A DNA stretch of 64,000 bases from Octopus sinensis (lineage: Eukaryota): contig NC_042997.1 in assembly GCF_006345805.1 (NCBI RefSeq), positions 22,754,001 through 22,818,000 on the forward strand, in the 5' to 3' direction. The notes under the pieces were generated by a model that did not search any database, was not told the origin of the DNA, and was given only the letters and a program-made list of their open reading frames with translations. Every line of letters begins with the position of its first letter. Position 1 is the stretch's first letter. Below, piece by piece: positions 84-32,900 of the stretch. Made by a program: the position numbers and the translations under genes.

Positions 84-1295
84 CATGGTGCATAAGATAT
101 TTGAGAACATACCTTTTTCAGGTCATTGCTGCATTTTTTGCTAACTCTGTATAATCTTTGTTTCAGAAAATAATAATGGTAGACCCTCAGCTTAATCAAG
201 AAAGGAAGTGGATGTTGTTATAAAGGCTGAGCATAGTGATTTAGAAATATCTCAATTTTTAAAAGTTGCCAGATGTTTCATCTACAAAGTTCGTAAGGAG
301 CTAGAGACTGAAGATGGAAATGTATCACCAGTATCAAAGCATAAAAAGCATTCTAAACACTCTGAAATCATCAGAACACTTGAATTTATCCAGCAAGATC
401 AACAGACCAGAAAGTCCATGAGGTCAATTGCAAAAGATTTCTCTGTGTCAGAAGGACAATCAGAAATGTTGTCCACGGAGACATCAGATATGTTTTATAT
501 GATGAGGAAAGGTCAATTTATCATAAAAAGCAAAAGGAAATCACTACAACAGATCTAAAAGGCTCTTAAACAAACTGAAAATTCCAGTAGATTTGATTTG
601 GTTTTTCTCAAGAAAAACGCCAACCAAGATCAAAAAGTTAACAGAAGAAATGACAGATAGTTGTGTAGACCCTTCTGAACTTCCAAGTGTTATGCATACC
701 TAATTTCCTGCAACTGTCATGGTTTTATTGGTTGTCAGCAATGAAGGACATGTAATACCTCCTTACTTCTTTCTACAAGGCCTTATAGTTAACTCTGCTG
801 CCTACATTGAGGTCCTGAAAATAATTGTTAAGCCCTGGATAGACAGTGTATGCAATGGAAGGCCATATGTATTTCAGTAAGACTCTGTACTATCACACAT
901 GGCTCTAGTAACACAAGAATGGATGGCTGAAAATTTTCATGATCACACAGCCCCTAACATTTGGCCTCTTAATTCCCCAGATTTCAATCTAGTGGACTAT
1001 ATGTGCAGCATTGTTAAGAGAGAGGTCAATGAGCACACCCATAACACCAAAGATTCTTTGAAAGCAGCCATAGTCAGAGTAATGTCCAAAATGAACCAGG
1101 ACCACTTGATTCGAGCATGTAGATGATTTAGATCTCATATAGAAGCAGATGTTGAAGCTGAAGATGGCTTTATTGAATAACATTATAGAAAAGAAGGTTT
1201 ATTATCCTCATAGCATTTTTTGATAAATAAAGTTATGTTATTTTATGTTTTTTTATACACATAAATCTGTCCTCAAATATCTTACGCACCGTCTG
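84..1295 (+). mobile_element. Tc1/mariner superfamily, maT (DD37D) transposon, near full length but inactivated
   Basis: Imperfect TIRs: CATGGTGCATAAGATATTTGAGAACA at 84 and TGTCCTCAAATATCTTACGCACCGTCTG ending ~1295. Broken transposase frames 208-558 and ~860-1180. In FQ*DSVLSH...WPLNSPDFNLVDY I count 37 residues between the 2nd and 3rd catalytic Asp. Stops and frameshifts present. Confidence 0.85.
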
Positions 1296-1820
1296 TCTGT
1301 ATGTATATATATACATACACACACAAATACCAAATCCCATTTCTTCAACATAATGCAATGTCTATCATTATTTATGGCTTTGAATTATAGTAAATGTTTC
1401 TCCAAACTGAAATTTTTCCATTTCTATCATCTGTAATTTAATTCCATTTTTATTAATTGGAAACCTGAATTCCATCACTTCCTTTACTAGTTTTGTTGTT
1501 GTTATTTCTCAAAAATATATTAAAAATAATGTACACTTCTGTGTTGTACAAACAAAATTTGTCATTTTAGCATCTTTCCAATGCTGGCATGGACTGACTG
1601 GTTTTCACTACCCATTATGATTCCAAATAATCTCATCCATGAGTCGGGTCATTAATCACAGATCTGGCATCATTACTTCCCTCCACATCTACTGAATATG
1701 TCTTCCCCTGTCATCATGTAACATATTTTCACTCAACACTCATTATACATTTACAATACGTGCACACAAGCATAGTAATTTCTCTCTTACATACATGAAT
1801 TATAATAGAAAGTGCCTTAC

Positions 1821-2550
1821 TTGTGTGTACCCAGTTCAACAGCATGATCCCATTTTATTTTCATTTTGTTAGCTACCACACTGTTGTGAAGTATAGATAC
1901 CGAGAATTTGAAACGATCTGATGCAAACAAATCTGATTCTATAATAACAAGTTCAGAAATAGATTTATTTCTAGTTAACAGTATGGCTGGTTTATTTGGT
2001 TCTTGATAATATTTTGTTTCATTGCAATCACTTGAATTTAAGATTTCTTCAATTCTCTTATACTTTAAGGATCTCAAAGCATCAATATATGCCAACTTCT
2101 GAGTTTCTTCTTCAGAAACAGATTTTCCAAAACCAATGGCTAAACTTCCAAGTTTAAGTATTCCTTCTTTTTCAATGTAGCCCTTCCTAACATTATAATC
2201 CAAAAAGAAAGTGCAATGTGTAGCATGAAGAGCTCGATCAAGACACATAATGGCTGAATTGTATGTAAATTCTTTGTCACTTAAGTAATGCTGTAACTTT
2301 CTGAGAGAGACTCTCAAAGATGCCATTTCTAGATTGGAGTTGGCTTCAGAAGAGTCCCTCTTCATTGGAGGATATTCAACAGGGTAGCTATACTTTTCAT
2401 TCAAGCGATCGCTTGGATATAATGAGTCACGATGCTCATTTTTAAAATATTTATTTTCAGGTGGCAGATTATAAGAAGATCGTACAATTCTGGTATCAAG
2501 TGGTCTTTTCATCCCATCATTTCTAGACTGAAGAAAACTGGAGCGCATAT
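1821..2550 (-). CDS. Large internal exon of an NKRF/CDKN2AIP-like protein (two dsRBD-like repeats); gene continues past the left edge
   Basis: Acceptor ttatttgtag|AT at 2551/2550, donor AA|gtaagg at 1821/1820, 730 nt open. ELVIIE...SILHNSVVANKMKIKW resembles the recalled NKRF motif NFVITEN...ILNNSASFNKMSIEY. SAIMCLDRAL...GFGKS...QKLAYIDALRSLK resembles a second such repeat. Confidence 0.65.
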
Positions 2551-5349: not shown

Positions 5350-5756
5350 TATTTTTCTACCCATGCTGTACAGAAAAACATGCAAAATTAATGAATGTAT
5401 GCATGTATGTATAGGTGTCTGAGGACATTACCCTCATGACCTTCCCAAGACTAGTGGGCAAAGGGTGAATGGGTATCTATGTATATATAATAATGAAAAA
5501 TATGGCACAGAAGGGCAACAAAGAAATTTACAAGAAAAAAGAACTGCATAAACCAATACAAACATGCTCCAACCCTCTGTCAGTTATTGATGAAATATCA
5601 TAATTTCAACTCCTTCCAACAAAATTCTGCAATTTGAGTGTACCAGCAACATGTGAGCTGCTGGGGTATAAACAAATGGACATGAAGAAAAAAGGACAGC
5701 AACAGAAGTTCAGTATTTTGACCAAATGGTAAATTAAGGAGTTCTGTGAAAGTAAT

Positions 5757-5880
5757 CATCATCATCATCATTTTAGCATCCACTTTCCTGCTGGCATGGG
5801 TTAGATGGTCTGACCATAACTGGTAAGCCAGAGAGCTGTACCAAGTATCAGTCTGATCTGGCTTGGTTTCTAATGCCAAC
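5757..5880 (-). mobile_element. 3'-terminal fragment of the RTE LINE family
   Basis: (ATC)n tail followed by CCACTTTCCTGCTGGCATGGGTTAGATGG, matching 7108-7260. Confidence 0.75.
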
Positions 5881-6106
5881 CACTAGGACTGCAATTTCAC
5901 TCGGCTTGATCATTTATCGCCTCTGTGAGATCCAACATTTGAGGATCATGTTTCAACCACCATGCCCCTTGTCTTACTGGGTCTACCTCTTTCACAGGCT
6001 CCCTTCACAGTCAAGAGGCAGGTAAAAAATACAAAACACGTACATGTGTATGAGTAAAACATTTTTAAACACAAAACATACACAAACATGTAAATACACA
6101 TGTATG

Positions 6107-6145
<39 letters not shown>

Positions 6146-6472
6146 TCAAAATTAGATTTAATTAGATGTGCATATAGGTGTGTGTGTGTGTTTGTCTACA
6201 TACATATAAACCCACACATGTGTATACATGTGGGAAGTGCACATATGTGTGTATCATCATTGTTACATTCATTTTTCTTTCCTTGCTGATATTAGTTGAA
6301 TGACACTGCCTGTGTCACTATCCTACAGTGAGATGCCCTTTCTAATAAAATCCGTTACTCCACACCATTGCACATTGAACCATCACAAGACAAAAGCATG
6401 TCATTACAAAAACAAATGAAAAACAGGTGAACACTGCAGGCACATAAACAGACATACAAACACATACCACAC

Positions 6473-6510
<38 letters not shown>

Positions 6511-6736
6511 CAAAAACGGGACTAGAATGCAAAACATCCAGACAAGTTAGGTGATACAAAAAAGGGACAACAAAAGATCCAGATAGACGATACAAAGAAA
6601 ACAAGAAGTTATTCGGAGTTTTCTTTCCTCAGTCGAGTTCCAGATTATCTTTGCAATTTCGGCTGTCCAGTTAAGGTGAACTATATGTATCTTCAGTTTG
6701 GTGTTTTAGACTACTCGGACATTCTGACATCTTCAT

Positions 6737-6890
6737 AAAAACCACCCTGTACACTCTGTGGAGTGGCTGGCATTAGGAAAGGCATCCAGCTGTAAAAACC
6801 ATGCTATAACAGACGATGGAGCCCCTTAGCAGTTCTGGTCAAATCATCTAACGCATGCCAGCATGGAAAACCGGATGGATGATGATGATG
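6737..6890 (+). mobile_element. 3'-terminal fragment of the RTE LINE family
   Basis: TACACTCTGTGGAGTGGCTGGCATTAGGAAAGGCATCCAGCTGTAAAA...GCATGGAAAACCGGATG(GAT)n. Confidence 0.8.
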
Positions 6891-7275
6891 AGTTAGAGGG
6901 ATAATTATATGGCCCCCTAAAAATATGAACTCATTCATATGTATTAAGTCATATGTAAATGAACTTCTGTCTATATGTATTAAATCTCAAAGATATTAGG
7001 CTTATGAGCACCTTTTCAGTAGTCAGAGATAAGGATTGAACCTACTAATTTCAATGTAATTTAATACATTACGATTTGCTCACATCCTCTTCTCACACAA
7101 CTGAGAAATCATCATCATCGTTTAACGTCCGCTTTCCATGCTAGCATGGGTTGGACGGTTCAACTGGGGTCTGGGGAGCCCGAAGGCTGCACCAGGCCAG
7201 TCAGATCTGGCAGTGTTTCTACAGCTGGATGCCCTTCCTAACGCCAACCACTCCGAGAGTGTAGTGGGTGATTTT

Positions 7276-7675
7276 ATGTGCCACCGACACAGGTGCCAGA
7301 CAAGGCTGGCGAACAGCCACGCTCGGATGGTGTTTTTATGTGCCACCGACACAGGTGCCAGACGAGGCTGGCAGACGGCCACGCTCGGATGGTGTTTTTA
7401 TGTGCCACCGACACAGGTGCCAGACGAGGCTGGCAGACGGCCACGCTCGAATGGTGTTTTTATGTGCCACCGACACAGGTGCCAGACGAGGCTGGCAGAC
7501 GGCCACGCTCGGATGGTGTTTTTATGTGCCACCAACACAGGTGCCAGACGAGGCTGGCAGACGGCCACGCTCGGACGGTGTTTGTTACGTGCCCACAGCA
7601 CGGAGGCCAGTCGATGCGGTACTGGCTACGGTCCCGTTCGGATGGTTTTCTTATGTGCCACCGGCACTGGTACCA
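7276..7675 (-). repeat. Tandem array of 62-nt units in the LINE 3' UTR (5 near-identical, 1 diverged, 1 partial)
   Basis: Unit (+ strand) ATGTGCCACCGACACAGGTGCCAGACGAGGCTGGCAGACGGCCACGCTCGGATGGTGTTTTT starts at 7276, 7338, 7400, 7462 and 7524. Confidence 0.97.
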
Positions 7676-7828
7676 CAAGGATACAAATTCCATTGATGTT
7701 CATCTATTTTGATTCGATTTGACTTTGATTTGATTTGCCTCAACAGGTCTTCTCAAGTGTCACAAGCAGGAAGGTATGCACAGGCGGACTGACTACGTCC
7801 CAGGTAGGGGCCACGGGTTATGGCTTCA

Positions 7829-8227
7829 CTAGTCTTGCCGGGTCTTCTCACGCACAGCATACTTCCATAGGTCTCGGTCTCTGGTCATTTCCATGGTGAG
7901 ACCTAATGTTCGAAGGTCGTGCTTCACCACCTCGTCCCAGGTTTTCCTGGGTCTACCTCTTCCACGGGTTCCCTCAACTGCTAGGGATTGGCACTTTCTC
8001 ACACACCTATCTTCATCCATTCTCGCCACATGACCATACCATCGCAATCGTCTCTCTTGCACGCAACAACTGATGCTTCTTAGGTACAACATTTCTCTTA
8101 GGGAACTAACACTCTGTCGAGTAAGTACACTGACATTACACATCCATCGGAGCATACTGGCTTCATTCCTCATGAGCTTACGCATGTCCTCAGCAGTCAC
8201 GGCCCATGTTTCACTGCCATGTAGCAT
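7829..8227 (-). pseudogene. Frameshifted C-terminal part of LINE ORF2
   Basis: MLHGSETWAVT...RLRWYGHVARM...GRGRPRKTW...DRDLWK, a typical RTE C-terminus in a different frame from 8211-10376. Confidence 0.9.
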
Positions 8228-10376
8228 TCACCAGCAGAGGTAAGAGCTCTCTAAACTTTGCCCAGGCTATTCTTATTCTAGCAGTTACACTCTCAGCGCA
8301 CCCACCCCCACTACTGACTTGGTCACCTAGATAACGGAAGCTATCAACTACTTCTAATTTTTCCCCCTGGAAAGTGACGGAAGTTGTTTTCTGCAGATTT
8401 TCGGAGGTCAATGCTCCCGAGCATCTGCCACATATAAAGACTATCTTCCCAGTTAGCCTACCTTTGACATTGCTGTACCTCTTATGTGTCCATAGCTTAC
8501 ACTGGGTACATCTTATAGAGTTTCTACCTACACCTTTTCTACAGATCGAGCAGGGCCATCTTCCTGAGGACATTTGTGGATTGCCTACCTTTCTACTTAT
8601 TATGACTTTGGTTTTAGCTAGGTTGACTCTAAGGCCCCTCGATTCTAAACCCTCCTTCCACACCTGGAACTTCTCCTCCAGTTCTGATAGTGACTCAGCA
8701 ATTAGAGCGAGGTCGTCAGCATAGAGGAGCTCCCAGGGGCAACCTGTCTTGAATTCCTCTGTTATTGCCTGGATGACTATGATAAATAGGAGGGGGCTGA
8801 GTACTGAACCCTGGTGGACCCCAACCTCTACTTTGAATTCTTCTGTGTACATGTTGCCAACCCTAACCTTGCTTACGGCATCTCTGTACATGGCTTGCAC
8901 AGCCCTCACCAGCCATTCATCTATCCCTAGTTTCCTCATTGACCACCAGATGAGGGATCGGGGGACCCTATCAAAGGCTTTCTCCATGTCAACGAAAGCC
9001 AGACACAGGGGCTTATCTTTGGCTAGGTATTTCTCCTGCAGCTGCCGTACCAGGAATATAGCATCAGTGGTGCTTTTCCCTGGCACAAACCCAAACTGCA
9101 TCTCATCTAAACTAACTCTCTCTCTAATTAGTTGGGCTATGACCCTCTCCGTAACCTTCATTACCTGATCCAACAGCTTGATACCTCTATAATTATTTGT
9201 ATCTAGGGCATCGCCTTTACCTTTGTAGCAGTTGACTAGTACGCTGCTACACCAGTCATTGGGTATGACTCCTTCGTGTATCACCTGGTTGACTATATGG
9301 GTGACTAGGTTGTAGCTGACACTGCCAGATATTTTGAGCATCTCTGCATTAATTCCCGATGGGCCTGGGGCTTTCCCTGTCTTCATGCTTCTAATTGCCT
9401 TAGCTACCACGGAACTATCAACTTGGATAGCTGGTCCCTCTGTTGGGTCAACATTCGGCAGACTCTCTTTATCCCATTCATTTTCTTTATTCAGCAACCT
9501 TTCATAGTGGCATCTCCAAACCTCTCTCTTTGCATCCTCATTTAGCGCAAGTGAACCATCATCCATGCGAACACACTTCTCTCCTACCACATCACGATTC
9601 TCTCTCACACACTGTCTTGCAACACGAAATACCTCAAGTCTTTCATCCTCACGGCACAGAACATTGGCAAATTTTTTCTCATCCGCTTCCCCTCTGGCTA
9701 AATAAACCTGTCTCCTAGCTTCCCTTCTGGCTGTCTGATACAATTCCCTGCTACCACCGTTCTTCCAGTCCTTCCAAGCCTGTCTCTTTTGTCTAATAGC
9801 CCTGTCAACCACAGTGTTCCACCACCATGTCACTCTGGGTTGAGATGGTACTTTGCTCCATCCACAGATCTGGTCAGTGGCTGTCAGCAGATTGTCCCGT
9901 AGAAATCTCCAGTTGTCTTCCACATTAAGTGAAGCTATATCCCCTTCTATTTCGTCAAAGGCTTCGAGTAGTATGTCTCTAAATTTCTGTCCATTTGCAG
10001 GATCTTTAAGCTTCCAGACCCTTCTCCTCCAAGCAGGTCTTCTTCTGGGCAACCATTTAGCTCTGATCCTGAAGTCGCTAACTACTAATCTATGTTGAAG
10101 AGTGCATTCTTCGCCTGGAAAGGTTTTGGCATTTATAATCAGCCCTCTTTCCCTTTTTCTGGCAAGGATGTAGTCGATCTGGCTGGTGTGTCTGCCAGAA
10201 CGGTAGGTGACTAGGTGAGAGGAGAGTTTCCTGAAGTTGGTATTGCAGACCATAAGGTCATTTGCATCACAGAACTCCAGCAGCCTGGTTCCCTCCTCAT
10301 TACGAGAGCCGAAACCGTAGCCTCCATGGACGCCATGGAAGCCCCCGACATGTCCATTGAAATCACCTGTAATCAA
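8211..10376 (-). CDS. LINE ORF2 (C-terminal half of endonuclease, reverse transcriptase, PHD-like CxxC finger), 721 codons without a stop
   Basis: Provided ORF track; catalytic YADD intact. Ends prematurely (LLVNATWQ*) at a frameshift near 8228. Confidence 0.9.
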   Translation of the reverse strand: MITGDFNGHVGGFHGVHGGYGFGSRNEEGTRLLEFCDANDLMVCNTNFRKLSSHLVTYRSGRHTSQIDYILARKRERGLIINAKTFPGEECTLQHRLVVSDFRIRAKWLPRRRPAWRRRVWKLKDPANGQKFRDILLEAFDEIEGDIASLNVEDNWRFLRDNLLTATDQICGWSKVPSQPRVTWWWNTVVDRAIRQKRQAWKDWKNGGSRELYQTARREARRQVYLARGEADEKKFANVLCREDERLEVFRVARQCVRENRDVVGEKCVRMDDGSLALNEDAKREVWRCHYERLLNKENEWDKESLPNVDPTEGPAIQVDSSVVAKAIRSMKTGKAPGPSGINAEMLKISGSVSYNLVTHIVNQVIHEGVIPNDWCSSVLVNCYKGKGDALDTNNYRGIKLLDQVMKVTERVIAQLIRERVSLDEMQFGFVPGKSTTDAIFLVRQLQEKYLAKDKPLCLAFVDMEKAFDRVPRSLIWWSMRKLGIDEWLVRAVQAMYRDAVSKVRVGNMYTEEFKVEVGVHQGSVLSPLLFIIVIQAITEEFKTGCPWELLYADDLALIAESLSELEEKFQVWKEGLESRGLRVNLAKTKVIISRKVGNPQMSSGRWPCSICRKGVGRNSIRCTQCKLWTHKRYSNVKGRLTGKIVFICGRCSGALTSENLQKTTSVTFQGEKLEVVDSFRYLGDQVSSGGGCAESVTARIRIAWAKFRELLPLLVNATWQ

Positions 10377-10458
10377 AATGTAAACAAGTATGTTCCTTGC
10401 AGCTAACTCATTTATATAATGATACGAAGTTCAATGCTAGTCAATTATTAAGTCAGCA

Positions 10459-10787
10459 ATCATCATCATCATCGTTTAACATCCGCTTTCCATGCTGGCA
10501 TGGGTTGGACAGTTTGACTGAGGACTGACGAGCCAGATGGCTGCACTAGGCTCCAATCTGATCTGGCAGAGTTTCTACAGCTGGATGCCCTACCTAACAC
10601 CAACCACTCCGAGAGTGTAGTGGGTGCTTTTATGTGCCACCGGCACGAGGGCCAATCAGGTGGTACTGGCAACGGCCACACTCAAATGGTGTTTTTTTAC
10701 GTGCCACCTGCACAGGAGCCAGTACTCACGCGCCACTGGTACAAGTGCCAGTAAGGCGACACTGGTAATGATCACGCTCGAATGGTG
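10459..10787 (-). mobile_element. 3' fragment of a related RTE with ~2 array units
   Basis: (ATC)n tail at 10459, conserved 3' block, then units with loops TACCACCTGA and TGTCGCCTTA (sense). Confidence 0.9.
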
Positions 10788-11312
10788 TGTTTTGTATATT
10801 TTCCAATTATATGATGCATTGTCACTGAAGACAACTAGCAATTTAGTTTTGATATCAAATAAGTGAGAGCTTTCATTGATTTCCAAATGTTCCAAGTGTT
10901 CAAAACTCAACACTAAATATTAAATTTACACCATTTAAAATTACGAGATTTTCCTGCTCTGCAACATCTATTAACAGTTAGGTGACTTTAGTAAACAGAC
11001 AAAATACTTTACAAATCGGTCTTGCTAATTGGTTAACCAGTACCCTAACAAGCCCTCTATACAAATTTTGAACTATCCCTTTCTCATACATACATGCACA
11101 CATATGCATGCATGCAGGCACAGAAAATTACCATGTATAATCATTGTGAAATATATTTGATAGTTGGCTGACTTCCAGGTTAAAAAGAAAATTTATATAC
11201 TTGGTATACTGCCAACTCAGCAAAATAAATACTGAGTTCTAAAATATTTAATAAAATTTCAATAAAATATCTTTTTTAAACTTTTTCATTACAATGAAAT
11301 AAATCTAAATAC

Positions 11313-11515
11313 CTTTAGCTTCTTTAATAATATCCATTAATATATCATCTGACTTTTTTTTAAACTTCTTATTGCTTTTTAAATTGGTAATATGCATTCT
11401 CAAATTGCTATTTGTTTTCGGGTAATTCTGATGTTGTCCAAGAGACATCTTTGGCATTTGAAATCCTCTTTGAAACATTTTCGCCTTATACATTCTTACA
11501 CAATTGTAAGTTTGC
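11313..11515 (-). CDS. Upstream coding exon of the NKRF-like gene
   Basis: Acceptor gattgttttttcag|G and donor AAAG|gtattt. 203 nt open (QTYNCVRMYKAKMF...DIIKEAK); ends in phase 1, which joins the 2550 exon (G+AT = Asp) in frame. Confidence 0.6.
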
Positions 11516-12135
11516 CTGAAAAAACAATCAATAAATTTTTATGTTCCCCTTTATTTGTACCCACATAGATCAAAGTCTGTCGTACTATTCACAAAAGCAT
11601 GGTAAAGCTATAAAAACTGCCCCTCAAGTTCATAAAAGTAGCCTTTACTACTAAATTAATTCCTTTCTGTTATATTTCTGTTAAATACACAGCCTTTGTT
11701 TAAATTAATTTTGAAAATAATGAAGTATTTTGTAAAATAAGTGTGTCATCATTAAGCCGGTGGTTTGAAAATGGATGTGAAAGTTTGAATTATAGAACCA
11801 AGAGCGTTTTCGAACAGTTTGGTATCGAGAATATTTATTAAAGAAAAGTGTATGGATAATGGATATACCCTTTAAAACACACAAATTTTATTTAAATAAT
11901 AGTGTTACATTTCATCCTTAATATTTCATAAAACAATCAAAACCACTTGAAATATTTTCTTGCGATTTCTAATTTAAGTTGCATTTGTTGTTAAAATATC
12001 GCTACATTTTACAATTTGGCTTTTACTCCCCAAGGGAAAAAACAAGTCGGTTGAAATTCTTAAATAATTCAACAACATACACTGCAACAAAATCTTTATT
12101 TCTATATTGCTAGTACTAAAATTTTCGCCTTATAC

Positions 12136-12211
12136 ATACTAAGAAATTGACTTCCTTTGTCATCAAAACAACCTCTGGTGAAATTATCAATGTTACACAA
12201 AGATTCCATTG
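12136..12211 (-). CDS. Tentative first coding exon of the NKRF-like gene (MESLCNIDNFTRGCFDDKGSQFLS)
   Basis: Acceptor ttttctccacaaag|CAATGG, ATG at 12209. A weak phase-2 donor AT|gtataa would join the 11515 exon in frame. Confidence 0.35.
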
Positions 12212-12239
12212 CTTTGTGGAGAAAAGCATTAAAAGGAAA

Positions 12240-12622
12240 TACCATATATACTCAAGTAATAGTCAATATCATGTAAAAGTCAACCTATTTTTGGCCAAAA
12301 ATTTGGGAATTTTCCATAGACCCCATATAAAAGTTAACCCTAATATTTCACAAACAACAGGATAATATTGGTGGGTCGAGGTACTCTGTTATCCTGCATG
12401 TAGAAATAACAGTGTTACAAAATTATGTGGCAACCTTACTAGCCTGCTCTATAGGTGGGATGCTTGGTACTTATAGTAAAACACCATTTAATAACGAGTA
12501 CTATACATCTGTCGATGGGTGCTACATCATTACTAAAATGTATGCATAGGATATGCTGCAAACCTGCATACATCTACAAGTACAATAAACACATGCGTTA
12601 TACACACATTGTTTATACGGTA
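12240..12622. mobile_element. Degenerate pogo/Tigger-like non-autonomous element
   Basis: Left end TACCATATATACTCAAGTA...GTCAACC, right end TATACGGTA; only partial TIR match. Confidence 0.4.
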
Positions 12623-12679: not shown

Positions 12680-13130
12680 TTATAGGGCCCTATGCCTGCC
12701 TTATTCTTCTTTTCATTTCCTCATTTGTAACATGATTTCTATATGATATTCCCTAAAGTCTCCTGAAATATTTCATCTCTGTAGCCTGGATTTTTCTTTT
12801 GATTTCTGTTGTCAGTGTCCATGTCTCATAGGCATACAGGAATATTGAGCTCACTAGTGATCCCATTAGCCTAATTTTGTAGCTCAGAGATATTTCTGTC
12901 TTTCCATAGTGTTCTGAATTTGGTTATTGTTGCTGTTGTTTTGGCAAAGTGGGATATCACTTCAGGCATGGAATGTTGGTCACTCACTATCATTCCAAGA
13001 TATTTGAAATTTTGAACTTGCTAGGCTCATCTCCACTGATGCTTATGATGATACTGATTCTGTTTGGGCAGTTTGTCATAACTTTTGTTTTCTCTGTGCT
13101 TATCTCCATAATAAATACATTTGTTTGTGG
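12680..13130 (-). mobile_element. Degenerate RTE-type LINE RT/C-terminal fragment
   Basis: Reverse complement reads approximately YETWTL...KIQATEMKYFRRL.GISYRNHVTNEEMKRRIRQA.GP, with disruptions. Confidence 0.65.
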
Positions 13131-13383
13131 GCTTCAGATACTTATAGATGTAAATATCTGTGTGCGTATATGGAGGTATGCAGATGTGAATATACAGAGG
13201 GATTAAGAACTGTATTCAATAACTAGGGTTAGGCCAATGTTGTTGGCTAGAAAAATGACTAAAATAAAAAATTATCATGGTATATTGTAAGCTTATATTC
13301 AGATAATTCCTTTGTCCATGTATAACATGTTCGCATATCATTATGACATTTTTGTGTTGTATATGTGCATATATATAAGTTCA

Positions 13384-13425
<42 letters not shown>

Positions 13426-13427
13426 TA

Positions 13428-13462
<35 letters not shown>

Positions 13463-13476
13463 TATGTATGTGTGTG

Positions 13477-13509
<33 letters not shown>

Positions 13510-13546
13510 ATATATATGTATGTGTGTGTGTGTGTGTGTGTGTGCT
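13384..13546. repeat. Long compound (TG)/(TA) microsatellite
   Basis: Read directly. Similar tracts at ~4895-4990, 6100-6190, 6476-6510, 17385-17445, 26050-26140, 33684-33735 and 60130-60161. Confidence 0.95.
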
Positions 13547-16639: not shown

Positions 16640-17109
16640 ACAGTACCGCCTGATTGGCACTTGTGCCAGTGGAATGTTAAAAGCACCATCCGAGCATGAT
16701 TGTTGCCAGGGCCACTGACTGGCATCCGTGCCAGTGGCATGTAAAAAGCACCATTTGAGCGTGATCATTGCCAGCGTTGCCTTACTGGCACATGTACTAG
16801 TGGTATGTGAAAAAACATTTGAGCATAGTCGTTGCCAGTGCCGCCAGACTGGCTTCCATACAGGTTGCACATAAAAAAACACCTCTTGAGTGTGGTCATT
16901 ACCAGTACCGCCTAATTGGTCCTCATGCTGGTGGCATGTAAAAGCACCCACTACACTCTCTGAGTGGTTGGCGTTATGAAGGGCATCCAGCTGTAGAAAC
17001 TTTGCCAGATCAGATTGGAGCTTAGTGCAGCCTTCTGGCTTGCCATTCCTCAGTCAAACCATCCAACCCATGTCAGTATGGAAAGTGGATGTTAAACGAT
17101 GATGATGAT
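16640..17109 (+). mobile_element. RTE 3' fragment with 5 diverged array units
   Basis: Units of ~63-66 nt with core GTGGCAYGTAAAAAGCACCATYYGAGC, then the conserved 3' block and (GAT)n tail. Confidence 0.9.
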
Positions 17110-17128: not shown

Positions 17129-17387
17129 TTGCCAGTGGCACATAAAAAGCACCATTTGAACGTGATCATTACCAGCGTCGCCTTACTGGCACTTGTGCTG
17201 GTGGCACATGAAGACACATTCGAGCAAGGTTTTTGCCAATGCCGCTGGACTGGCTCCTGTGCAGGTGGCACATAAAAAACACCATTTGAGCATGGCCGTG
17301 TGCCGGTGGCACGTAAAAGCACACAGGAGTGGTTGGTGTTAGGAAGGGCATCCATGCTAGCATGGAAAGCAGACGTTAAATGATGAT
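17129..17387 (+). mobile_element. Second adjacent RTE 3' fragment with internally deleted array
   Basis: Units with loops CGTCGCCTTA and ATGCCGCTGGA, a third unit missing its hairpin, a deleted 3' block and the tail. Confidence 0.85.
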
Positions 17388-22584: not shown

Positions 22585-23728
22585 TACAAGGGTTGGTTGA
22601 AAAGTTCATAGGCTAACCAAGATATTCTCAAGGAATGTGATCAAATGAGGTTTATTTTTCAACATAGTTCCCTTGCAGTCCACACACTTCTTTCATCCTG
22701 TTGTTCAAAAAAGTCATTAACAGCAGATATGTCATCATCATCACAATACTGATTCCCAGTCAAATGTTTTTTCATGTTGGGGAACAAATGATAGTCAGAT
22801 GGGGCCAAATTAAGAGAATAGGGAGCACGATCAACTAGTTCAAAGCCCAGTCATGCACAGCAGCCACTGAAACCAAGGACCAATGTTCTGGAGCATTGTC
22901 CTGATGAAATAAGGCCCCTTTCATCAGTTTTCCTGAGCACATGGTCTTGATAGCCTTTCGTAACTGTCTCAGCAAGATGGCACAGTACTCTCCATCAATG
23001 GTGTAGCCCTTTTGAAGATAGTCAATAAACACAATGCCATTTGCATCCCCAAAAAAACTGAGGCTATCACCTTTCTTGCACATGGAATGACTTTGGCCTT
23101 TTTGGAGTACGTGAAGAGGAGTGTTTCCACTGCATGGATTATCTCCTTGTCTCTGAGTCGAAGTGATGAAGCCAATACTCATCTTGGATAAGGAAACATT
23201 CAAGGAAACCAGCTGGATCTGCCTCAAACATTTTCTAATGATGTGATGACTCTGATGAGCTTTTTATCAGGTGTCAGATGTGACACCCACCAAGCAGAAA
23301 ATTTCCTCATGCCAAGTTCATTCTCAACACTCTCATGTATTAGTATTAGTTATTTGATTTATAGCCAATCGCCTGTCATCCATCACCATGTGGTGAATAC
23401 GATTAATGTTTTCCTAGAGGGTGGCAGTTGCAGGACGTCCAGACTTTGAATCATCTTCAAGACTATCTCTTCCCCTCCTAAAAGTCAGTTGCCCACTTTC
23501 GCGCTGTTGATAAAGCTGGAACGTCATCCTGTGATGTAGCAACATGTCAGCATGAATGTCCTTGGGGGCTATATCCTTCTTTCTGCAGTTACTGGTTAAT
23601 ACCACGATGCCAAAGTCGCAACTAGTTACTTTCGAAGTCTCCTTTGAACACTCAGATATCAGTTTACCGAGAAATAAATAATGAAGGACTGACATTAATG
23701 CATACAAGATCTCACAACACTCCTTCGT
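22585..23728 (-). mobile_element. Degenerate mariner element (Mos1/SETMAR-like)
   Basis: TIR TACAAGGGTTGGTTGAAAAGTTCATAGGC at 22585; transposase fragments GIVFIDYLQKG...LFHQDNAP and SLEDDSKSGRP. Far end uncertain. Confidence 0.8.
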
Positions 23729-24220
23729 AGTCGACGTACGAACTATTCCGATCAAACTCGTGCAACAGTGTCTCCTAAAAAAAACAACCGAAACTTCTGG
23801 AATGCATGTATGAATTCGGTTGCTCGCTCTAAAAGCTGAGCGGCAGTGTGGAATCTCCTTCATAGCGTTTAGGACTAATTAGGTTATTGAGTGTGTGTAC
23901 TTTTAGTATTGAGCTGAGACGATGGACAGTTAATTTTTGTTAAACTTGAGATTAAATTTATGTAAAGCAAAATAAATTTTGATTTTACATTTGAAAAGTT
24001 TCAGTTAATGTTAAAATTGCTATTCAATTTTTCAAACTGATTCCTTTCTAACAATTTCTGACACTGCTATGTAAAAAATTAGAGCTGGAGTGAACAAATA
24101 TTATATCAACTAAAAACAGCGGGAAAACAAGTTTGTAATATACATAGCACCTCGGTTTTCGAACACCTCTTATCACGAATAAATCGTGCCTTATCTCCTG
24201 TCTTTCTCATATTCATTTAA

Positions 24221-26741: not shown

Positions 26742-26968
26742 ATGGCACGGCACTCACTTTTCACCATTGGATTAATAATGTGTGTATTTGTCGCTCAATG
26801 TCATTGCTATTCGCAAAGAAATGAAAACCAGATAAATAATAAAAACCGTTACATTCATCGTAAAAGTATTTCTGATGTTTTTGTAAGATATCTTAGAGGT
26901 TATAGTGTTAAAGATGATGATGGAGGTACTTTAGATAAAAACAATCAGACTACCATAAAAAATATTAG
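26742..26968 (+). CDS. SLC9A8: NHE8 exon 1 (signal peptide and luminal extension)
   Basis: aacATGG; [22 protein letters not shown]...; donor AG|gtgagt, phase 2. Confidence 0.8.
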
Positions 26969-29900
26969 GTGAGTAAAGTTTCGACATTCAAATATAGTTA
27001 TAAACCTATGTTTATCTAATTATGAAATGTGTAAGTCTATGAAAGTGGGGGTTTAGAAAATGACAAAAATTTATATATAAGATTATATTTATTAAAAATT
27101 AAAAAAGCCTAAGGTCTTGCTTGATTTATGAAAAAAAGAACCACGAATAAGTATAAAACAATTAGGAAATATATTTCTTTATTAACATTTCCAATTTCTT
27201 AAGTTTTGATTTAACATATTTGATATTCGTTATTTTTTTTAAATGAAATATAATATTGCATGTTTTGTAAATATCTTGCCTCAATTTAATTTGTTTACAA
27301 TGTATAAAAATGTCGAAATACAATTGAAGTGAACTGATTGATTTAATTACATAATAAATCGGTTTAAATTTAAACTCATTGATTTTATTGTACTGCCAAA
27401 CCCTTAGCCATTATGTGTGTACATATACATACACACATATATATATGTATATGTATGTATGTATACACACATAATGGCTAAGGGTTTGGCAGTACAATAT
27501 ATATATATATATATTTTTTTTTTACAGCAATGTTGTTAAGTTGTCAAAATTCCATGGGGGTGTAAAAAAAGTAACAAGTGCCTTCTTGGCATGAAATGAA
27601 ACATGTTACATAAACCGTAGCTTTTACAAAGAAAAACGTTCGCAAACGAATGAAATGTTTTTGGGGGTTGTTATTTTTCTTCTAAATAGCATTATGTCTA
27701 ATACAATGATAATATAGTGAATTATTTTTATTGATATTTATTGTATACGTTTTTGTTTCAATATTAGCTTATGTCGAACAAGGCCTCAAAACCACTTATT
27801 ATTTTAAATTTGTTATTTGACATAATCTTTTTTTGTTTACTTAACGAACAGATTCCGATCCAAGCCAAGTAGAGAAACTCTTTATGTTAGTCGCTCGACC
27901 TGCAGAAAAAAAAATGCAATTCTGCTTCAAATATACATCTTACTGTCTTAAAAAGAAGAGGTGGGGACGTCGTTAATAATTTGATTGTAAATACTCCATG
28001 TCTGAAATGAAAGACAGAGTGGTCATGACTAGAATACATTTAATGATCGATTTCTTGTGTCAGGGAATGCCATGAGGCTGATCTACAACATCAAATCGAC
28101 AATTTTAATATTCCTTATTCATAGTGCAGTGGTGTCATTTATTAAAATCAAAAATATAGACTGTGTATTTTGAGATTCTTCAAATATCTAGCAATTCATT
28201 GTACTGGTTTTATTGTATAGAAAGCAATTAGAGGGAGAGAAAAAGGATTTGATTTCATATCTTATTTTAATATTGAACTTTTAACACCTGTAATAAATGT
28301 AAGCAGCAAACGTTATAACTTCGTTAATGTTGCGAAATTTTAATTAAACTGAATACTGCTGTCTGGGTCCAGTTGACCTAATTTTAAAACTAACCTATGA
28401 TTTCGTTTTTCCTAAGTTGTGAAGCTAATTGGGGCATAGTTTGTTTGTTGAAATATAAAAATTTCTTTCGTTGGTTATTTGCGACAAAATTTATAAGTTA
28501 CAGCACTGTGCGTCCTTTGGACACTTTAAAATTGAATCAGTTTTTATTATATTATTGTAACCAGTTGTGTACTTTTAATATTTCATTTAATCAGATGTAT
28601 TTGTATTGTTTGTTGGATCTTAACCTCTGGTTATATTTATTAAATTTATGTTTCATCTTGTTTATTATTGAATTCATACTGTCTTCTTAACGGAACATAC
28701 ACATTGCTTAATCTTTTCTACTATGCACAACGTCTGAAATTTGGGACAGGCACCTAGTTGATTATATCGACTCCGAAAAGGCCAAGTCGACCTCGGTGGA
28801 ATTTGAACTCAAAACATGAAATGACGCTTGGCGTTTTGCCCAGCGTGCAAAGTACTTTTATTATCATCATTATCAGTTCATCCGCCTGTTCTTCCGTGCT
28901 GAGAGAAACCCTTCTTCATGAGTCTGTTTTCTTTGATCTTCTACACCTTCTGCATACGAACTTAAAGCACTTTCTTAACTAAGAGGCTACTTGAAAGCCG
29001 CCTCTTCTGCATACATCTGTGGAGCCACTTTCTCTTTTCCCTGGCCTTTAACCTTACACTAAAGTTGACATAGCTAATTAAATGGACTTGCTCAACTAAT
29101 TTCTCTCAAGTTTCTACATTTCTAGTATGCTTGGAACTTTTACTGCAGCTCTTTGATATGTTCTGCAATGAGAACAGATCGCCAGCTTTGAAATTTTCCA
29201 AGGACATTCAATACTGAACTTCCTTATTATATCTTCAAGAATTATAATGAATAGCATTGGATTGAACAGAGGTTTAGGAAACATCTTGACTGAATTTGTT
29301 AATAATATCTCGGCCTTGCATCCATCTCTTTATTTGCCTCCATTCCTTTCCTTCGTTGCTTTTATAATCATGTTTGAAATAACCTCCGTAACTGATTCCG
29401 CTGCTTATTACAAGTTTTCATGGCAACATTTCTAAGGACATACGCTGCTTACATGATTCAATTAAAATTTTAAAATAATCAAGAATTTGGACAAATTTTG
29501 GTAAACATTTAATCAACCACATTAATGCTTAGAACCCAACGGAAAAGAAAATGGACGATTTTAATTGAAATATGAAAAGGCTTTTTTTTTTATCACATAG
29601 GAACCAGAGGTGCCCTTAAAACGGGTCGTCGTTATTAAAAAGATTAACTTAGATTTTACTATCTTGTTCATTTCTTATTTAACAACACTTGAACGTACAT
29701 ATTTATGCCTTTTCATTTTACTTAGCTGAAAGTTCTGTCAGTGTTGTTTCTGACACACTCTTCCCAATTTGCTTCCTTATTCGTGCAAACTGCGTTTCAG
29801 TTTAGAAACATTTAGGAATGATGTTTGTTAGCTTAAATCATTGGCATATACACATTTATCTTTCAAATAATAATCTCCCATTTGCTTCTGTTAATTTAGA

Positions 29901-32900
29901 GACCGATTTTGTCTGTCATTCATGGAATTAAAATATAGCTAAGAAAAGTAATAAAACTCATTTAGTGTTGGTATCATCACATCAAAATATTTGCATCTTT
30001 TTGCTTACAGCATAGAGAACCTTATTGAATCCCTTACTTTCTACTTATTTTTAATAATATAAATTTCTTACTCTTCCCACTTCGTTTTCAATCATCCTGT
30101 GTTTAGCCCATTTAATACCATCCAATCAGCTATGCTAATTTAACATGAGGTTGATCTGAGACTGAAGGCAATATAGTCTTAGCATTTATAGTTGAATTTG
30201 TAATTACAATGACAAATCAGACCAAATGTATGAATCTGAATGCTGGCACATGATAAAGGAGGCATGTGTAAAATCATTGCTTTCTATAAAGGACGCCAGT
30301 GGAGAATCTTACACATCTTTTTATCTCTGCAAACCTTCAAATGAAGAAAGTGCATGACTGCAACAGTGTGATCCTTGAAATAAAATGTCAGTGTCTCAGA
30401 TGCATTTAAAATGGACCAGGATAGGGTACCAAAATTAGCAATACGATTAACATCACATAGGAAATAAACCCTTGGACTGCCAAAGGACACTTGGTACAGA
30501 ATAGGTGAAAGCAAGTTGGAAGAAATGGATCTTTTGGATGGTACACTAAGAGAACCATCCGAGCATGATCGTTGCCAGAGTGGCTAACTGGCATCCATGC
30601 CAGTGGTATGTAAAAAGCACCATTCGAGTGTGATTGTTACCAGCGTCGACTTACTGGCTCCTGTGCAGGTGGCATGTAAAAAAACACCACTTGGGCGTGG
30701 CCGTTGCCAGTACCGCCTGACTGGCCCTTGTGCCGGTGGCATGTAAAAGCATCCACTATACTCTCGGAGTGGTTGGCGTTAGGAAGGGCATCCAGCTGTA
30801 GAAACTCTGCCAGATCAAGATTGGAGCCTGGTGCAACCAGTCTTCGGTCAAATCGTCCAGTCCATGCTAGCATGGAAAGCGGACGTTAAACGATGATGAT
30901 GATGATGATTCCAATAAATGTTATAGATTTAGAATCCCCTTTTTTGAACACAATTTTTCTGGAATTAAAACCTAAGAGCCTCTTTGCAGTTGTTCAACCT
31001 GCAAAATAGGAGCCAAATTTCTTTTAGGCCACACCCTTACATTTCAAAAGGAGCAGAACACCTGGGATAATGTGGTTCTGGATGCAATTTGTGTTGATCT
31101 GAGACTAAATAACAAGCAGCCAGATAGCTTATGATTTCAAAATTAAGAATGTACAAAATAGAAAAGAATTGCTGCAAGAGTGGAATCATCAGAGGAAGAG
31201 GATTGATACGGAAGCAAACACTGTTTACATGCTATAGGCAAAAGAGAAGTGGTTGTACCAAAATGTATACAGTATCTTTATGGAGGAAATTATGTAAAAC
31301 AGCCAATTGGTAGCCAGGGAGAACACTTATCCTTTAAATATTGTGTTGTCAGTCTAATGTTCTTGAGTACCTAAGTTATTACTGCATCCCTTTAGTATTT
31401 TTACTGTTATTCCCTTCATCTAGATCCTCTGAAGTCATTGTGTTTGGTTGAAATAAAACCTTTTCCGATAAAGAGAAGTGTTTTAATTTCCATTTTGCTG
31501 TAACAACTCTCAAAAGGGCTTAATCCGCCTTACTATGAATATCTACCAAGTTCAAATGCTTTTGGAGGAGGAAAAAATTGAATTTCAGAAGTCAATGGGA
31601 AACCATCTGTTTTATGTGTTCAGAAACCATGTGGCTTTATAGTTCTGTCCATCCATTTGTATATTTGCATGGTCAGGAATATTTTTGTTTTTATTATACT
31701 CTAGTCTCACTATCTCTCTGGTTTGTTATATTCACCTGACTACTAACTGCCTGCCTTATGCCTTTTCCTTCATGCATATATTATAAATACTATAGCAAGG
31801 TGTCACCTAAGATCCAACATTAAATTCCAGCTTTCAATACATACTTTGGGAACATGGAATATATTTGCATTGCATATATGGCTGAAGAAGATATAATCAT
31901 TGGTAAACAACTGAGAAAATTTTACAGGTTACAGTTTCATCAAAATTTTATTAATGTAGGAATAAATATAGGCAATATGTAATTCAGGAAACTCTTATGC
32001 ACAGAAAATAAAAGATTACACAGATGGATTGGTGAAACTGCCAGACAGATGGGCAAGATGCCAAGCTGTATCAACCCAAGTTAACAACTTTTCTCTTATA
32101 TAAGCATCAAGAATGCATGTAAGGAGGGAAGATTTGTACGCATGATCAACTTTGATAGAAACCCTATTTACAGGTGAACATAGTGTTATGCATTGAGAAA
32201 TCAATCAAGGAAGTAGTATAGTTATTACATGTGAAGAATTTTTATAGGTTTATCTTTGGTCTTAAAACATGAAACAAAAGTTTGACTTCAGTTAGAATTC
32301 TATTAACTCTTTGTCTGTCCAAAGCATTTTCATAAGTTTGTCCAAAACAGCCATGCTTGTTTTCAGACTTTTAGTTAGCCTTTGTTTTATACATTTTGAA
32401 TAATATAAAATTTTTCCTTTTATAAGTCATAAGTTACTCGGATAGTTGAAAAAAGTTTCATTTGCAATGGATATCTTACTTTTGTATTTAAAATCATTCT
32501 GACACTTAATATAAGGTAAAATAAATTTATGAGTATCATCATCATATAATCATATATCCATTTTTCATGCTGGTATCTGTTTGCTAGGATGTCACAATCA
32601 CAAACATTTCATTTGGGAAACTACTGTTCTCATAGATTGGTACACATACCTGGCAATTTGGTTTGGTTTCTATGGCTGGATGCTATTGCCTATTAGCAAC
32701 CACTTTACAGAGTGTACTTGAGTGCATTTTCTTATGGTACCAGAAATGATAAGTCATCAAATAGACAGGACTTAAAGAACCTCACAACTCTAGGCCTTCT
32801 CATTTGCTTCTTTACCACTTTAAGTGCATACAGAATGAGTTTTTCATGGTAGGAATGTTGTCAAATTCTCAGTAAAACAGGATTAAAATATATATATATA

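What the first reader, a model, noticed from the sequence alone, without database searches (positions are those of the whole stretch)
10360..10400. LINE 5' truncation point forms a splice acceptor in frame with the host's upstream exon
Seen: on - the junction reads TACTTGTTTACATTTTGATTACAG|GTGATTTCAATGGACATGTC (AG at 10368-10367). The LINE is sense-oriented inside the NKRF-like gene's intron. The upstream exon 11313-11515 ends in phase 1 (G), and G+GT gives Gly followed by DFNGHV, exactly the ORF2 frame, open for 719 codons to 8211. Inference: an alternative isoform could fuse a host N-terminus to an intact RT (~810 aa if the tentative first exon is right), driven by the bidirectional promoter. 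This would be exonisation or incipient domestication. Frame match alone has a 1-in-3 chance.
Basis: partly seen in the sequence, partly recalled or inferred. Interest (0 to 1): 0.7.

Follow-up and report, generated by a model that had tools for sequence, protein, structure and literature searches.

The report
Truncated octopus LINE, coincidental splice motif
A broken copy of a jumping gene (an RTE-type LINE) lies upstream of an octopus gene and its cut end happens to look like a splice site, but nothing shows that it is spliced into a host protein, so it is most likely ordinary genomic debris.

Summary
The sequence observation is correct. On the minus strand the text reads TTGATTACAG|GTGATTTC, with AG at 10368-10367. 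Homology to an Octopus bimaculoides LINE copy begins exactly at 10367. The LINE frame is open for 718 codons to the stop at 8213-8211. The putative exon 11515-11313 ends in phase 1.

- **Host coding start.** The host gene's conserved coding sequence begins downstream of the LINE, at the ATG at 2548. The 907-aa Argonauta hians orthologue starts at that Met, and the acceptor 2 nt upstream of it is conserved in three species.
- **Upstream exon.** The "upstream exon" has no counterpart in Argonauta. Its 77-codon open frame is unremarkable (111 frames of at least 75 codons in the window), its GC is lower than its surroundings, and its donor is weak. A "host N-terminus" is therefore not established.
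- **State of the LINE.** The copy is defective. It lacks about 170-230 N-terminal endonuclease residues, has a 12-nt deletion and a frameshifting deletion of about 60 nt, and has lost a conserved zinc-finger Cys.
- **The junction motif.** It scores in the top 1.5% of AGs in that stretch as an acceptor, but it scores equally well as a donor (CAG|GTGATT).

Transcript evidence could not be obtained. The most likely reading is a young, dead RTE-type LINE with a chance splice-like junction. Interest is low.

The parts
10367..10368 (-). AG dinucleotide at the LINE 5' junction. A (10368) comes from the flank and G (10367) is the first LINE base. It is acceptor-like, and together with GT at 10366-10365 it is also donor-like.
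10369..10458 (-). AT-rich stretch that, with A at 10368, forms the 91-nt spacer between SINE copy A and the LINE. It is not LINE-derived and supplies the T-rich tract (CTTGTTTACATTTTGATTAC) and possible branch points.
7706..10367 (-). 5'-truncated, defective RTE-type LINE copy (2662 nt, 47% GC), in the same orientation as the host gene.
10070..10367 (-). Remnant of the C-terminal third of the APE-type endonuclease, starting at the GDFNGHV motif. About 170-230 N-terminal residues are missing, and there is a 12-nt in-frame deletion after GHVG.
8598..9212 (-). Reverse transcriptase domain (RVT_1), with YADD at 8723-8712.
8421..8552 (-). PHD-like zinc finger of the LINE. A Cys that is near-invariant in homologues is replaced by Tyr (HKRYS instead of HKKCS).
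8211..8228 (-). Site of a frameshifting deletion of about 60 nt (about 20 codons lost between LLPLLV and MLHGSETW), with the resulting stop TGA at 8213-8211.
7829..8227 (-). C-terminal 132 residues of the LINE protein, now in a different frame from the RT.
7706..7737 (-). (AAATC)n-like microsatellite tail, the probable 3' end of the LINE.
   Evidence: microsatellite tails are typical of RTE elements (PMC9115989)
11313..11515 (-). Putative upstream exon ('exon X'). It has a good acceptor, a weak donor and a 77-codon open frame. It is not conserved in Argonauta and is unverified.
1820..2550 (-). Real conserved host exon ('exon Y'). It carries the conserved start codon (ATG 2548-2546), a conserved acceptor (AG 2552-2551) and a strong donor AAG|GTAAGG.
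10459..10793 (-). SINE-like repeat copy A, with a (GAT)n tail, in the same orientation and just upstream of the LINE.
7108..7690 (-). SINE-like repeat copy B, with six 62-nt tandem units and a (GAT)n tail, just downstream of the LINE.

Best explanation
This is an ordinary, probably young but dead copy of an RTE-type LINE in an octopod genome. Reverse transcription or integration stopped inside the endonuclease-coding region, at the GDFNGHV motif. The copy joined an AT-rich stretch that happened to end in ...TTTTGATTACA, so flank-A plus LINE-G gives AG|GT. The long open frame is simply what remains of the LINE's own ORF. The copy lies 7.8-5.2 kb upstream of the exon carrying the host gene's conserved start codon, in a 5'-UTR intron or in upstream intergenic DNA. 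It therefore sits between no two known coding exons. The frame match with the putative exon 11515-11313 is a 1-in-3 coincidence with an ORF that is itself unverified. If the site is ever spliced, the expected product is low-level chimeric or NMD-prone noise, not a functional host-RT fusion. Shown: the anatomy, the truncation point, the defects, and the position of the host start codon. Inferred: lack of function and youth of the insertion.
For: - **LINE family and architecture.** Full-length homologues are about 1040-1100 aa with Exo_endo_phos + RVT_1 + PHD. The closest relatives are O. bimaculoides 'craniofacial development protein 2-like' LINE fragments at 83% aa identity. An octopus RTE LINE with EN + RT + zinc finger in a single 1109-aa ORF is described in PMC9115989.
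- **Truncation point.** It lies at 10367, and the flank is not LINE-like.
- **Defects.** The EN N-terminus is missing, 12 nt are lost after GHVG, and a frameshifting deletion separates the RT from the C-terminal 132 aa. 13 of 194 near-invariant columns are changed, including C631Y in the zinc finger.
- **Host CDS start.** The only deep homologue of exon Y is a 907-aa Argonauta hians protein whose residues 2-242 align to the residues right after the Met at 2548. Its CDS starts at the orthologous ATG. The acceptor 2 nt before the ATG is conserved in three species. Exon Y is 91-97% identical to a related species, against about 80% with indels in its flanks.
- **Exon X.** There are no blastn, tblastn or tblastx matches in the Argonauta locus. 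The window holds 111 stop-to-stop ORFs of at least 75 codons. The donor score is 1.0.
- **Junction.** It is also donor-like.
- **Database.** No protein spanning exon X plus LINE turned up.
Against: - The acceptor look-alike is fairly good: 9th of 584 AGs, close to the score of the real exon Y acceptor (4.0 against 4.5), and it is the first good one downstream of the putative donor.
- Exon X is one of only 3 open exon-like segments passing my thresholds in the 24 kb upstream region. Its phase also fits the conserved exon Y acceptor, giving an in-frame extension to the conserved Met.
- 718 codons without a stop implies either youth or constraint.
- Octopus transcripts very often include TE fragments (more than 35% of transcripts; PMC9115989).
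- The splice matrices were typed from general knowledge, not trained on octopus.
- Negative database results are weak, because one word-index search missed a true homologue that HMMER later found.
Confidence: 0.8

Rival explanations
1. Real but non-adaptive exonisation. The AG at 10368-10367 is used as a cryptic acceptor by some transcripts that start upstream, from exon X or from another 5'-UTR exon. The resulting chimeric RNAs either end in the LINE or continue and are degraded by NMD. They change the 5' UTR or lower host expression, but no functional RT fusion is made.
For: - The acceptor score is decent and there is a possible branch point TTTAC at about -16.
- The element is in sense orientation.
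- The conserved acceptor before the start codon shows that a 5'-UTR intron exists, so upstream exons must exist somewhere.
- TE fragments are pervasive in octopus transcripts (PMC9115989).
- An AATAAA at 9491 on the sense strand could end such transcripts before the RT domain.
Against: - No transcript data are available.
- It is not known whether the transcription start lies upstream of the LINE at all. The gap to the divergent Na/H-exchanger gene is 24 kb here, against 4.9 kb in Argonauta.
- The site is also donor-like.
- Eight other AG sites in the same stretch score as well or better.
Confidence: 0.15
2. Incipient or established domestication. An alternative isoform translates exon X (plus a first exon) in frame into the LINE and yields a host-N-terminus/RT fusion protein of about 800 aa. 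Alternatively, an in-frame cassette exon is made using internal donors at 8461 or 8305 and reads on into exon Y.
For: - Phase compatibility holds for exon X to LINE and for exon X to exon Y.
- The RT motifs are intact.
- Donor-like sites at 8461 and 8305 would give exon lengths divisible by 3.
- There are precedents for LINE-derived coding exons: BCNTP97 with an RTE-1 endonuclease, and L1 ORF1 fusion isoforms (PMC12129022).
Against: - The conserved host protein starts downstream.
- Exon X is unconserved, lower in GC than its surroundings, and has a weak donor.
- The LINE copy shows decay rather than constraint: a frameshifting deletion, loss of a zinc ligand, and loss of the EN.
- No fusion protein was found in the databases.
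- Every frame coincidence is 1 in 3.
Confidence: 0.02
3. The LINE lies outside the host transcription unit altogether (upstream intergenic DNA), and 'exon X' is a chance ORF. No splicing question then arises.
For: - Only exon Y and the Na/H-exchanger exons are conserved between the window and Argonauta.
- The region 10.4-13.2 kb is full of TE fragments.
- The exon X ORF is unremarkable.
Against: - The conserved acceptor before the ATG demands an upstream exon.
- With the divergent neighbour 24 kb away, a TSS upstream of the LINE is quite possible.
- This rival overlaps the best explanation, which already allows either location.
Confidence: 0.3

Closest known systems
Octopus RTE-clade LINEs (e.g. 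RTE-2_OV of O. vulgaris and the O. bimaculoides RTE; PMC9115989)
   Same: Single-ORF architecture with APE endonuclease + RT + zinc finger, about 1050-1100 aa in full-length relatives. Microsatellite-like 3' tail. 83% aa identity to O. bimaculoides fragments annotated 'craniofacial development protein 2-like'.
   Different: This copy is 5'-truncated at the GDFN motif, internally deleted and frameshifted, so it cannot be autonomous. Clade placement was not tested by phylogeny here.
BCNTP97 / CFDP2 of ruminants (RTE-1 endonuclease domain recruited as a coding exon; Iwashita et al. 2006, as cited in PMC12129022)
   Same: A sense-oriented RTE-type LINE fragment inside a host gene region whose ORF could be read through splice sites. 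This is the reason why octopus LINE fragments carry the CFDP2-like name.
   Different: BCNTP97 is fixed, expressed and conserved across ruminants, and it uses the endonuclease domain. Here there is no transcript or conservation evidence, the EN is mostly lost, and the RT is what would be captured.
L1 ORF1p fusion isoforms (Lyosin/MYL4, RFX5, NUP42, USP4; PMC12129022)
   Same: A LINE ORF incorporated as an alternative first or last coding exon of a host gene.
   Different: Those are conserved over long periods with RNA-seq and protein evidence, and they involve ORF1. PMC12129022 states that conserved fusions with ORF2-type proteins remain to be elucidated.
Cryptic splice sites and gene-breaking by sense-oriented intronic LINEs (general knowledge of mammalian L1)
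   Same: A sense LINE in an intron offers acceptor-like, donor-like and poly(A) motifs (AG 10368-10367; donors at 8909, 8663, 8588 and 8461; AATAAA at 9491).
   Different: Use of any of these motifs is unknown in this locus.

Membership tests
RTE-clade non-LTR retrotransposon (truncated copy) | APE-type endonuclease N-terminal to the RT | tested here: met
   Only the C-terminal part is present. It aligns from GDFNGHV onward to the EN of full-length homologues and to O. bimaculoides P0122. Pfam Exo_endo_phos_2 E=0.0034, which is below the cut-off.
RTE-clade non-LTR retrotransposon (truncated copy) | Reverse transcriptase domain with the catalytic YxDD motif | tested here: met
   RVT_1 E=7.7e-32, residues 389-593. 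YADD at 8723-8712.
RTE-clade non-LTR retrotransposon (truncated copy) | Single ORF without ORF1 | not testable with these tools
   The 5' part is missing in this copy. Full-length homologues are single proteins of about 1050 aa.
RTE-clade non-LTR retrotransposon (truncated copy) | Phylogenetic placement of the RT within the RTE clade | not tested
   Inferred from best hits named CFDP2-like (an RTE/BovB-derived name) and from the architecture described for octopus RTE in PMC9115989. No tree was built.
RTE-clade non-LTR retrotransposon (truncated copy) | Short 3' UTR ending in a simple-repeat tail | tested here: inconclusive
   An (AAATC)n-like run lies at 7737-7706, about 90 nt after the stop. 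No second copy was available to confirm the end, and no target-site duplication was found.
TE exonisation / host-LINE fusion isoform | Transcripts with a splice junction joining a host exon to the TE | not testable with these tools
   No RNA-seq is accessible. No fusion protein was found in the protein collection, but that collection is incomplete.
TE exonisation / host-LINE fusion isoform | Acceptor consensus at the TE boundary | tested here: met
   YAG|G with a T-rich tract. Rough PWM score 4.0, 9th of 584 AGs. Caveat: the site is equally donor-like.
TE exonisation / host-LINE fusion isoform | A genuine upstream host coding exon in compatible phase | tested here: inconclusive
   The phase is compatible. 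However, the exon is not conserved, not unusual as an ORF and has a weak donor. The conserved host CDS starts downstream at 2548.
TE exonisation / host-LINE fusion isoform | Conservation or purifying selection on the TE-derived exon | not testable with these tools
   No orthologous locus holding this insertion could be fetched. The copy shows a frameshift and the loss of a conserved Cys.
   The 907-aa Argonauta orthologue gives only a sub-threshold dsrm hit (E=0.0011, 20 bits against a cut-off of 23). There is no G-patch or R3H and no PDB relative. It is annotated 'uncharacterized protein LOC115217295'.

The most novel reading that the evidence does not exclude
In this octopod, a young RTE LINE copy has been captured as an alternative coding exon of an uncharacterised dsRBD-like gene. 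Two routes are conceivable. It could be a terminal exon giving a fusion of a short novel N-terminus to RT. Or it could be an in-frame 1905- or 2061-nt cassette (acceptor 10367, donors at 8461 or 8305) that inserts an RT domain ahead of the conserved protein. This would be an early stage of ORF2/RT domestication, in a lineage where RTE LINEs are expressed in neurons.
Probability: 0.03. Interest if true: 0.55.

Novelty: already known. Interest (0 to 1): 0.12.

Why it matters
If the fusion were real it would be a rare example of a LINE reverse-transcriptase domain captured by a host gene. PMC12129022 notes that conserved ORF2-type fusions have still to be elucidated. It would also fall in cephalopods, where LINE activity in the brain is debated. 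As things stand it mainly illustrates two points. A young truncated LINE automatically brings a long open frame. And a junction AG with a 1-in-3 frame match is expected often in a genome that is a quarter LINE and SINE. The useful by-product is a better picture of the locus. The host gene's conserved start codon and its acceptor are defined, the divergent Na/H-exchanger neighbour is identified, and the intergenic/5'-UTR region is seen to have expanded from about 5 kb in Argonauta to about 24 kb through TE insertions.

Tried and rejected
1. **Does the LINE extend upstream of 10367?** The translation RNILV..YILIT vaguely resembles RDILFVA. I rejected this: local alignment of the 91-nt spacer to the LINE sequence upstream of the breakpoint in L004 and L005 scores no better than random intron pieces.
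2. **Target-site duplication.** I searched with two candidate 3' ends, 7706 and 7108. None was found.
3. **Is SINE copy B the LINE's own 3' UTR?** Not supported. L004 has no such sequence, and a second LINE fragment (6004-5925) abuts a SINE at a different relative position.
4. **Same-species or transcript contigs.**
   - An exact look-up of the exon Y ORF found nothing.
   - The fusion-peptide search found only LINE fragments.
   - The Logan contigs L001-L003 are collinear with genomic DNA, so they are not spliced.
5. **Orthologue of exon X or of a first exon in Argonauta.** I used blastn (words of 7 and 9), tblastn and tblastx. Only exon Y, the Na/H-exchanger exons and TEs matched.
6. **Rfam and tRNA scans of 5500-12500.** Nothing credible.
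7. **Literature searches for LOC115217295 and the SRR run numbers.** No hits.
8. **Species of the window.** Not identified beyond an octopod related to O. bimaculoides.
Full report
**Observation.** On the minus strand the text is ...CATACTTGTTTACATTTTGATTACAG|GTGATTTCAATGGACATGTC, with AG at 10368-10367. The putative exon 11515-11313 is bounded by TTTTTTCAG| and |GTATTT. It reads ...MYKAKMFQRGF...MDIIKEAK plus one G, so it ends in phase 1. Joining that G to GT at 10366-10365 recreates the LINE's own Gly codon. The frame then runs GDFNGHV... for 718 sense codons to TGA at 8213-8211.

**The element.**
- **Domains.** The ORF has an RVT_1 domain (E=7.7e-32, residues 389-593, YADD at 8723-8712), a weak match to the end of an Exo_endo_phos_2 domain at its start, and a PHD-like zinc finger.
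- **Relatives.** It has more than 1400 relatives. The full-length ones are single proteins of about 1040-1100 aa with Exo_endo_phos + RVT_1 + PHD, at up to 55% identity. The closest are Octopus bimaculoides, O. vulgaris and O. sinensis fragments annotated 'craniofacial development protein 2-like', at up to 83% identity. That name comes from the RTE/BovB-derived endonuclease of ruminant CFDP2.
- **Clade.** An RTE-clade LINE with EN, RT and a zinc finger in one 1109-aa ORF and a microsatellite 3' UTR is described for octopus in PMC9115989. I therefore call this an RTE-type LINE of an octopod, but I built no tree.
- **Extent.** The copy spans 10367 to about 7706, is 47% GC, and ends in an (AAATC)n-like run.

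**The truncation point.** blastn of the region against the O. bimaculoides copy L004 (GCA_001194135.2) begins at window 10367, at 84-88% nt identity. L004 reads ...CTCTTTGTGGCTG|GTGACTTCAATGG at that point. The 91 nt upstream (10458-10368, 30% GC) are no more similar to the LINE sequence 5' of the breakpoint than random pieces of the same region: 43% and 82% of controls did as well. So A(10368) and the T-rich tract come from the target DNA and G(10367) is the first LINE base. No target-site duplication was found.

**State of the copy.** Compared with full-length relatives it shows four kinds of damage.
- It lacks about 170-230 N-terminal residues, including most of the endonuclease.
- It lacks 12 nt after GHVG.
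- It has a deletion of about 60 nt between ...FRELLPLLV and MLHGSETW... that shifts the frame. The last 132 residues (8227-7829) are therefore out of frame and the RT frame stops at 8211.
- At 13 of 194 columns that are at least 95% conserved among 60 homologues the copy differs. These include a zinc-finger Cys to Tyr and another Cys to Arg.

The RT domain is intact by sequence, but this is not an intact ORF2. An open frame of 718 codons suggests little divergence since insertion. My own estimate, from the share of substitutions that create stops, is under about 3%. That fits a young copy and needs no selection.

**The host gene.**
- **A real coding exon.** The ORF at 2548-1817 is a genuine exon ('exon Y', 2550-1820). 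It is 91-97% identical to a related species' genomic contig, while its flanks are about 80% identical with indels. It has a strong donor, AAG|GTAAGG.
- **The orthologue.** An exhaustive HMMER search with the hypothetical spliced product of exon X plus exon Y found two proteins with E-value up to 0.001. Only one is a clear homologue: GAB1597554.1, 'uncharacterized protein LOC115217295 isoform X1' of Argonauta hians, 907 aa. Its residues 2-242 align to the residues immediately after the Met at 2548. Nothing aligned to the exon X part.
- **Start codon and acceptor.** In the Argonauta locus (L006) the CDS starts at the orthologous ATG. The sequence TTTT..AG|AT-ATG, an acceptor 2 nt before the start codon, is conserved in the window, in Argonauta and in the Logan species. 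The conserved protein therefore starts downstream of the LINE, and what lies upstream is a 5'-UTR intron.
- **The 'NKRF-like' label.** It is not supported. There is only a sub-threshold dsrm hit, with no G-patch, no R3H and no PDB relative.
- **Synteny.** In Argonauta the upstream neighbour is a divergently transcribed Na/H exchanger 4.9 kb away. In the window its first coding exon is at about 26849-26993 (+), so the corresponding interval is about 24 kb and is filled with TEs.

**The putative upstream exon.**
- *Against.* It has no match in the Argonauta locus by blastn, tblastn or tblastx. Its stop-to-stop frame of 77 codons is one of 111 frames of at least 75 codons in the window. Its GC (28.6%) is below both its surroundings (30.6%) and exon Y (34.2%). 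Its donor AAAG|GTATTT scores 1.0, against 5.1 for the exon Y donor.
- *For.* Its acceptor is strong (6.0). It is one of only three open exon-like segments that pass my thresholds in the 24 kb. Its phase also fits exon Y (G+AT, then ATG), which would extend the conserved ORF by 61 residues.

I put the chance that it is a real exon at roughly one in three. Even then it would more likely be an untranslated or lineage-specific exon than a 'host N-terminus'.

**The junction as a splice site.** I used an approximate metazoan acceptor matrix typed from general knowledge, not trained on octopus. With it the junction scores 4.0, 9th of 584 AGs between 11312 and 2552, close to the true exon Y acceptor (4.5). 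No better site lies between it and the putative donor. The same bases also score 4.8 as a donor (CAG|GTGATT). That is the usual ambiguity of AG|GT. Inside the LINE there are further donor-like sites and one AATAAA (9491) upstream of the RT domain. None of this shows use. In a genome that is about 13% LINE and 12% SINE (PMC13282606), and where more than 35% of transcripts contain TE fragments (PMC9115989), junctions of this quality with a 1-in-3 frame match should be numerous.

**Verdict.** The host coding exon upstream is unverified, the ORF2 is not intact, and domestication has no evidence. The most likely explanation (about 0.8) is a young, dead RTE-type LINE copy with a coincidental splice-like junction. 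Low-level non-adaptive exonisation is possible (about 0.15). A functional RT fusion is unlikely (about 0.02-0.03). The kind of event is well known: BCNTP97 with an RTE-1 endonuclease, and L1 ORF1 fusion isoforms (PMC12129022). Transcript data, TSS mapping and presence/absence of the insertion in related species would settle it.

**Caveats.** The species was not identified. The splice matrices are rough. The protein word index missed a true homologue once, so negative database results carry limited weight.

Noticed in passing
window 7108-7690, 10459-10793, 5751-5872, 6738-6891, 16655-17109, 17135-17387, 30534-30906, 36511-36679, 37739-37919, 44416-44575: An abundant SINE-like repeat family on both strands, with at least 10 copies in 64 kb. 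Each copy has a variable number of 62-67-nt tandem units at the 5' side (six units at 7205-7645), a core of about 170 nt and a (GAT)n tail. Related pieces also occur in the Argonauta locus L006. No tRNA-like head or Rfam match was found.
   Followed up: partly
window 5925-6004 (-): A second short fragment of the same LINE's C-terminal region (75% identity to 7974-7896), sitting 53 nt from another SINE copy (5872-5751) in the same orientation.
   Followed up: partly
window about 12700-13130 (-): A degenerate C-terminal fragment of a different LINE (..KTKVM..ETWTL..EMKYFRRL..), read by eye from the sequence. It shows that the region just upstream of the putative exon is also TE-derived.
   Followed up: no
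window 26849-26993 (+) and 41003-41101 (+); L006 1-5096 (-): Exons of a Na+/H+ exchanger gene, with 94% aa identity to Argonauta over 33 aa at 41003-41101. It is transcribed divergently from the host gene. The head-to-head synteny is conserved with Argonauta hians, but the spacer has grown from about 4.9 kb to about 24 kb.
   Followed up: partly
window 12118-12149 vs 11474-11506: A 33-nt segment covering the first ATG of the putative exon (GAATGTATAAGGCGAAAATGTT) is repeated 644 nt upstream at 85% identity (E=0.008). The meaning is unknown; it may be a remnant of a local duplication.
   Followed up: partly
window 208-558 (+), 22835-23863 (-), 58199-58603 (+): ORFs that look like mariner/Tc1-type transposase fragments (SGRP and HQDNAP..H-like motifs), recognised by eye only. 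The Pfam scan of 23417-23878 gave no hit.
   Followed up: no
window 13380-13545: A long compound (CA)n/(TA)n microsatellite.
   Followed up: no
proteins P0149 (O. vulgaris) and P0030 (Neoarius graeffei): Public annotations already contain chimeric models joining non-LINE sequence to this type of LINE. P0149 joins a Lys/Glu-rich N-terminus to ..LIFVAGDFNGHVG... P0030 is 'slc22a21 isoform X2', a 1004-aa protein aligning at 50% identity over 99% of this LINE query. Such predicted fusions are common and are usually unverified.
   Followed up: no
tool behaviour: The word-index protein search with exon Y did not return the Argonauta orthologue, which is 64% identical and shares long exact words such as QSRNDGMKRP. 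The exhaustive HMMER search did find it. Negative results from the index should be read with caution.
   Followed up: yes
window 6094-6230 (+): Two weak sub-threshold mir-297 matches (33 and 31 bits against a gathering score of 90), most likely simple-repeat artefacts.
   Followed up: no
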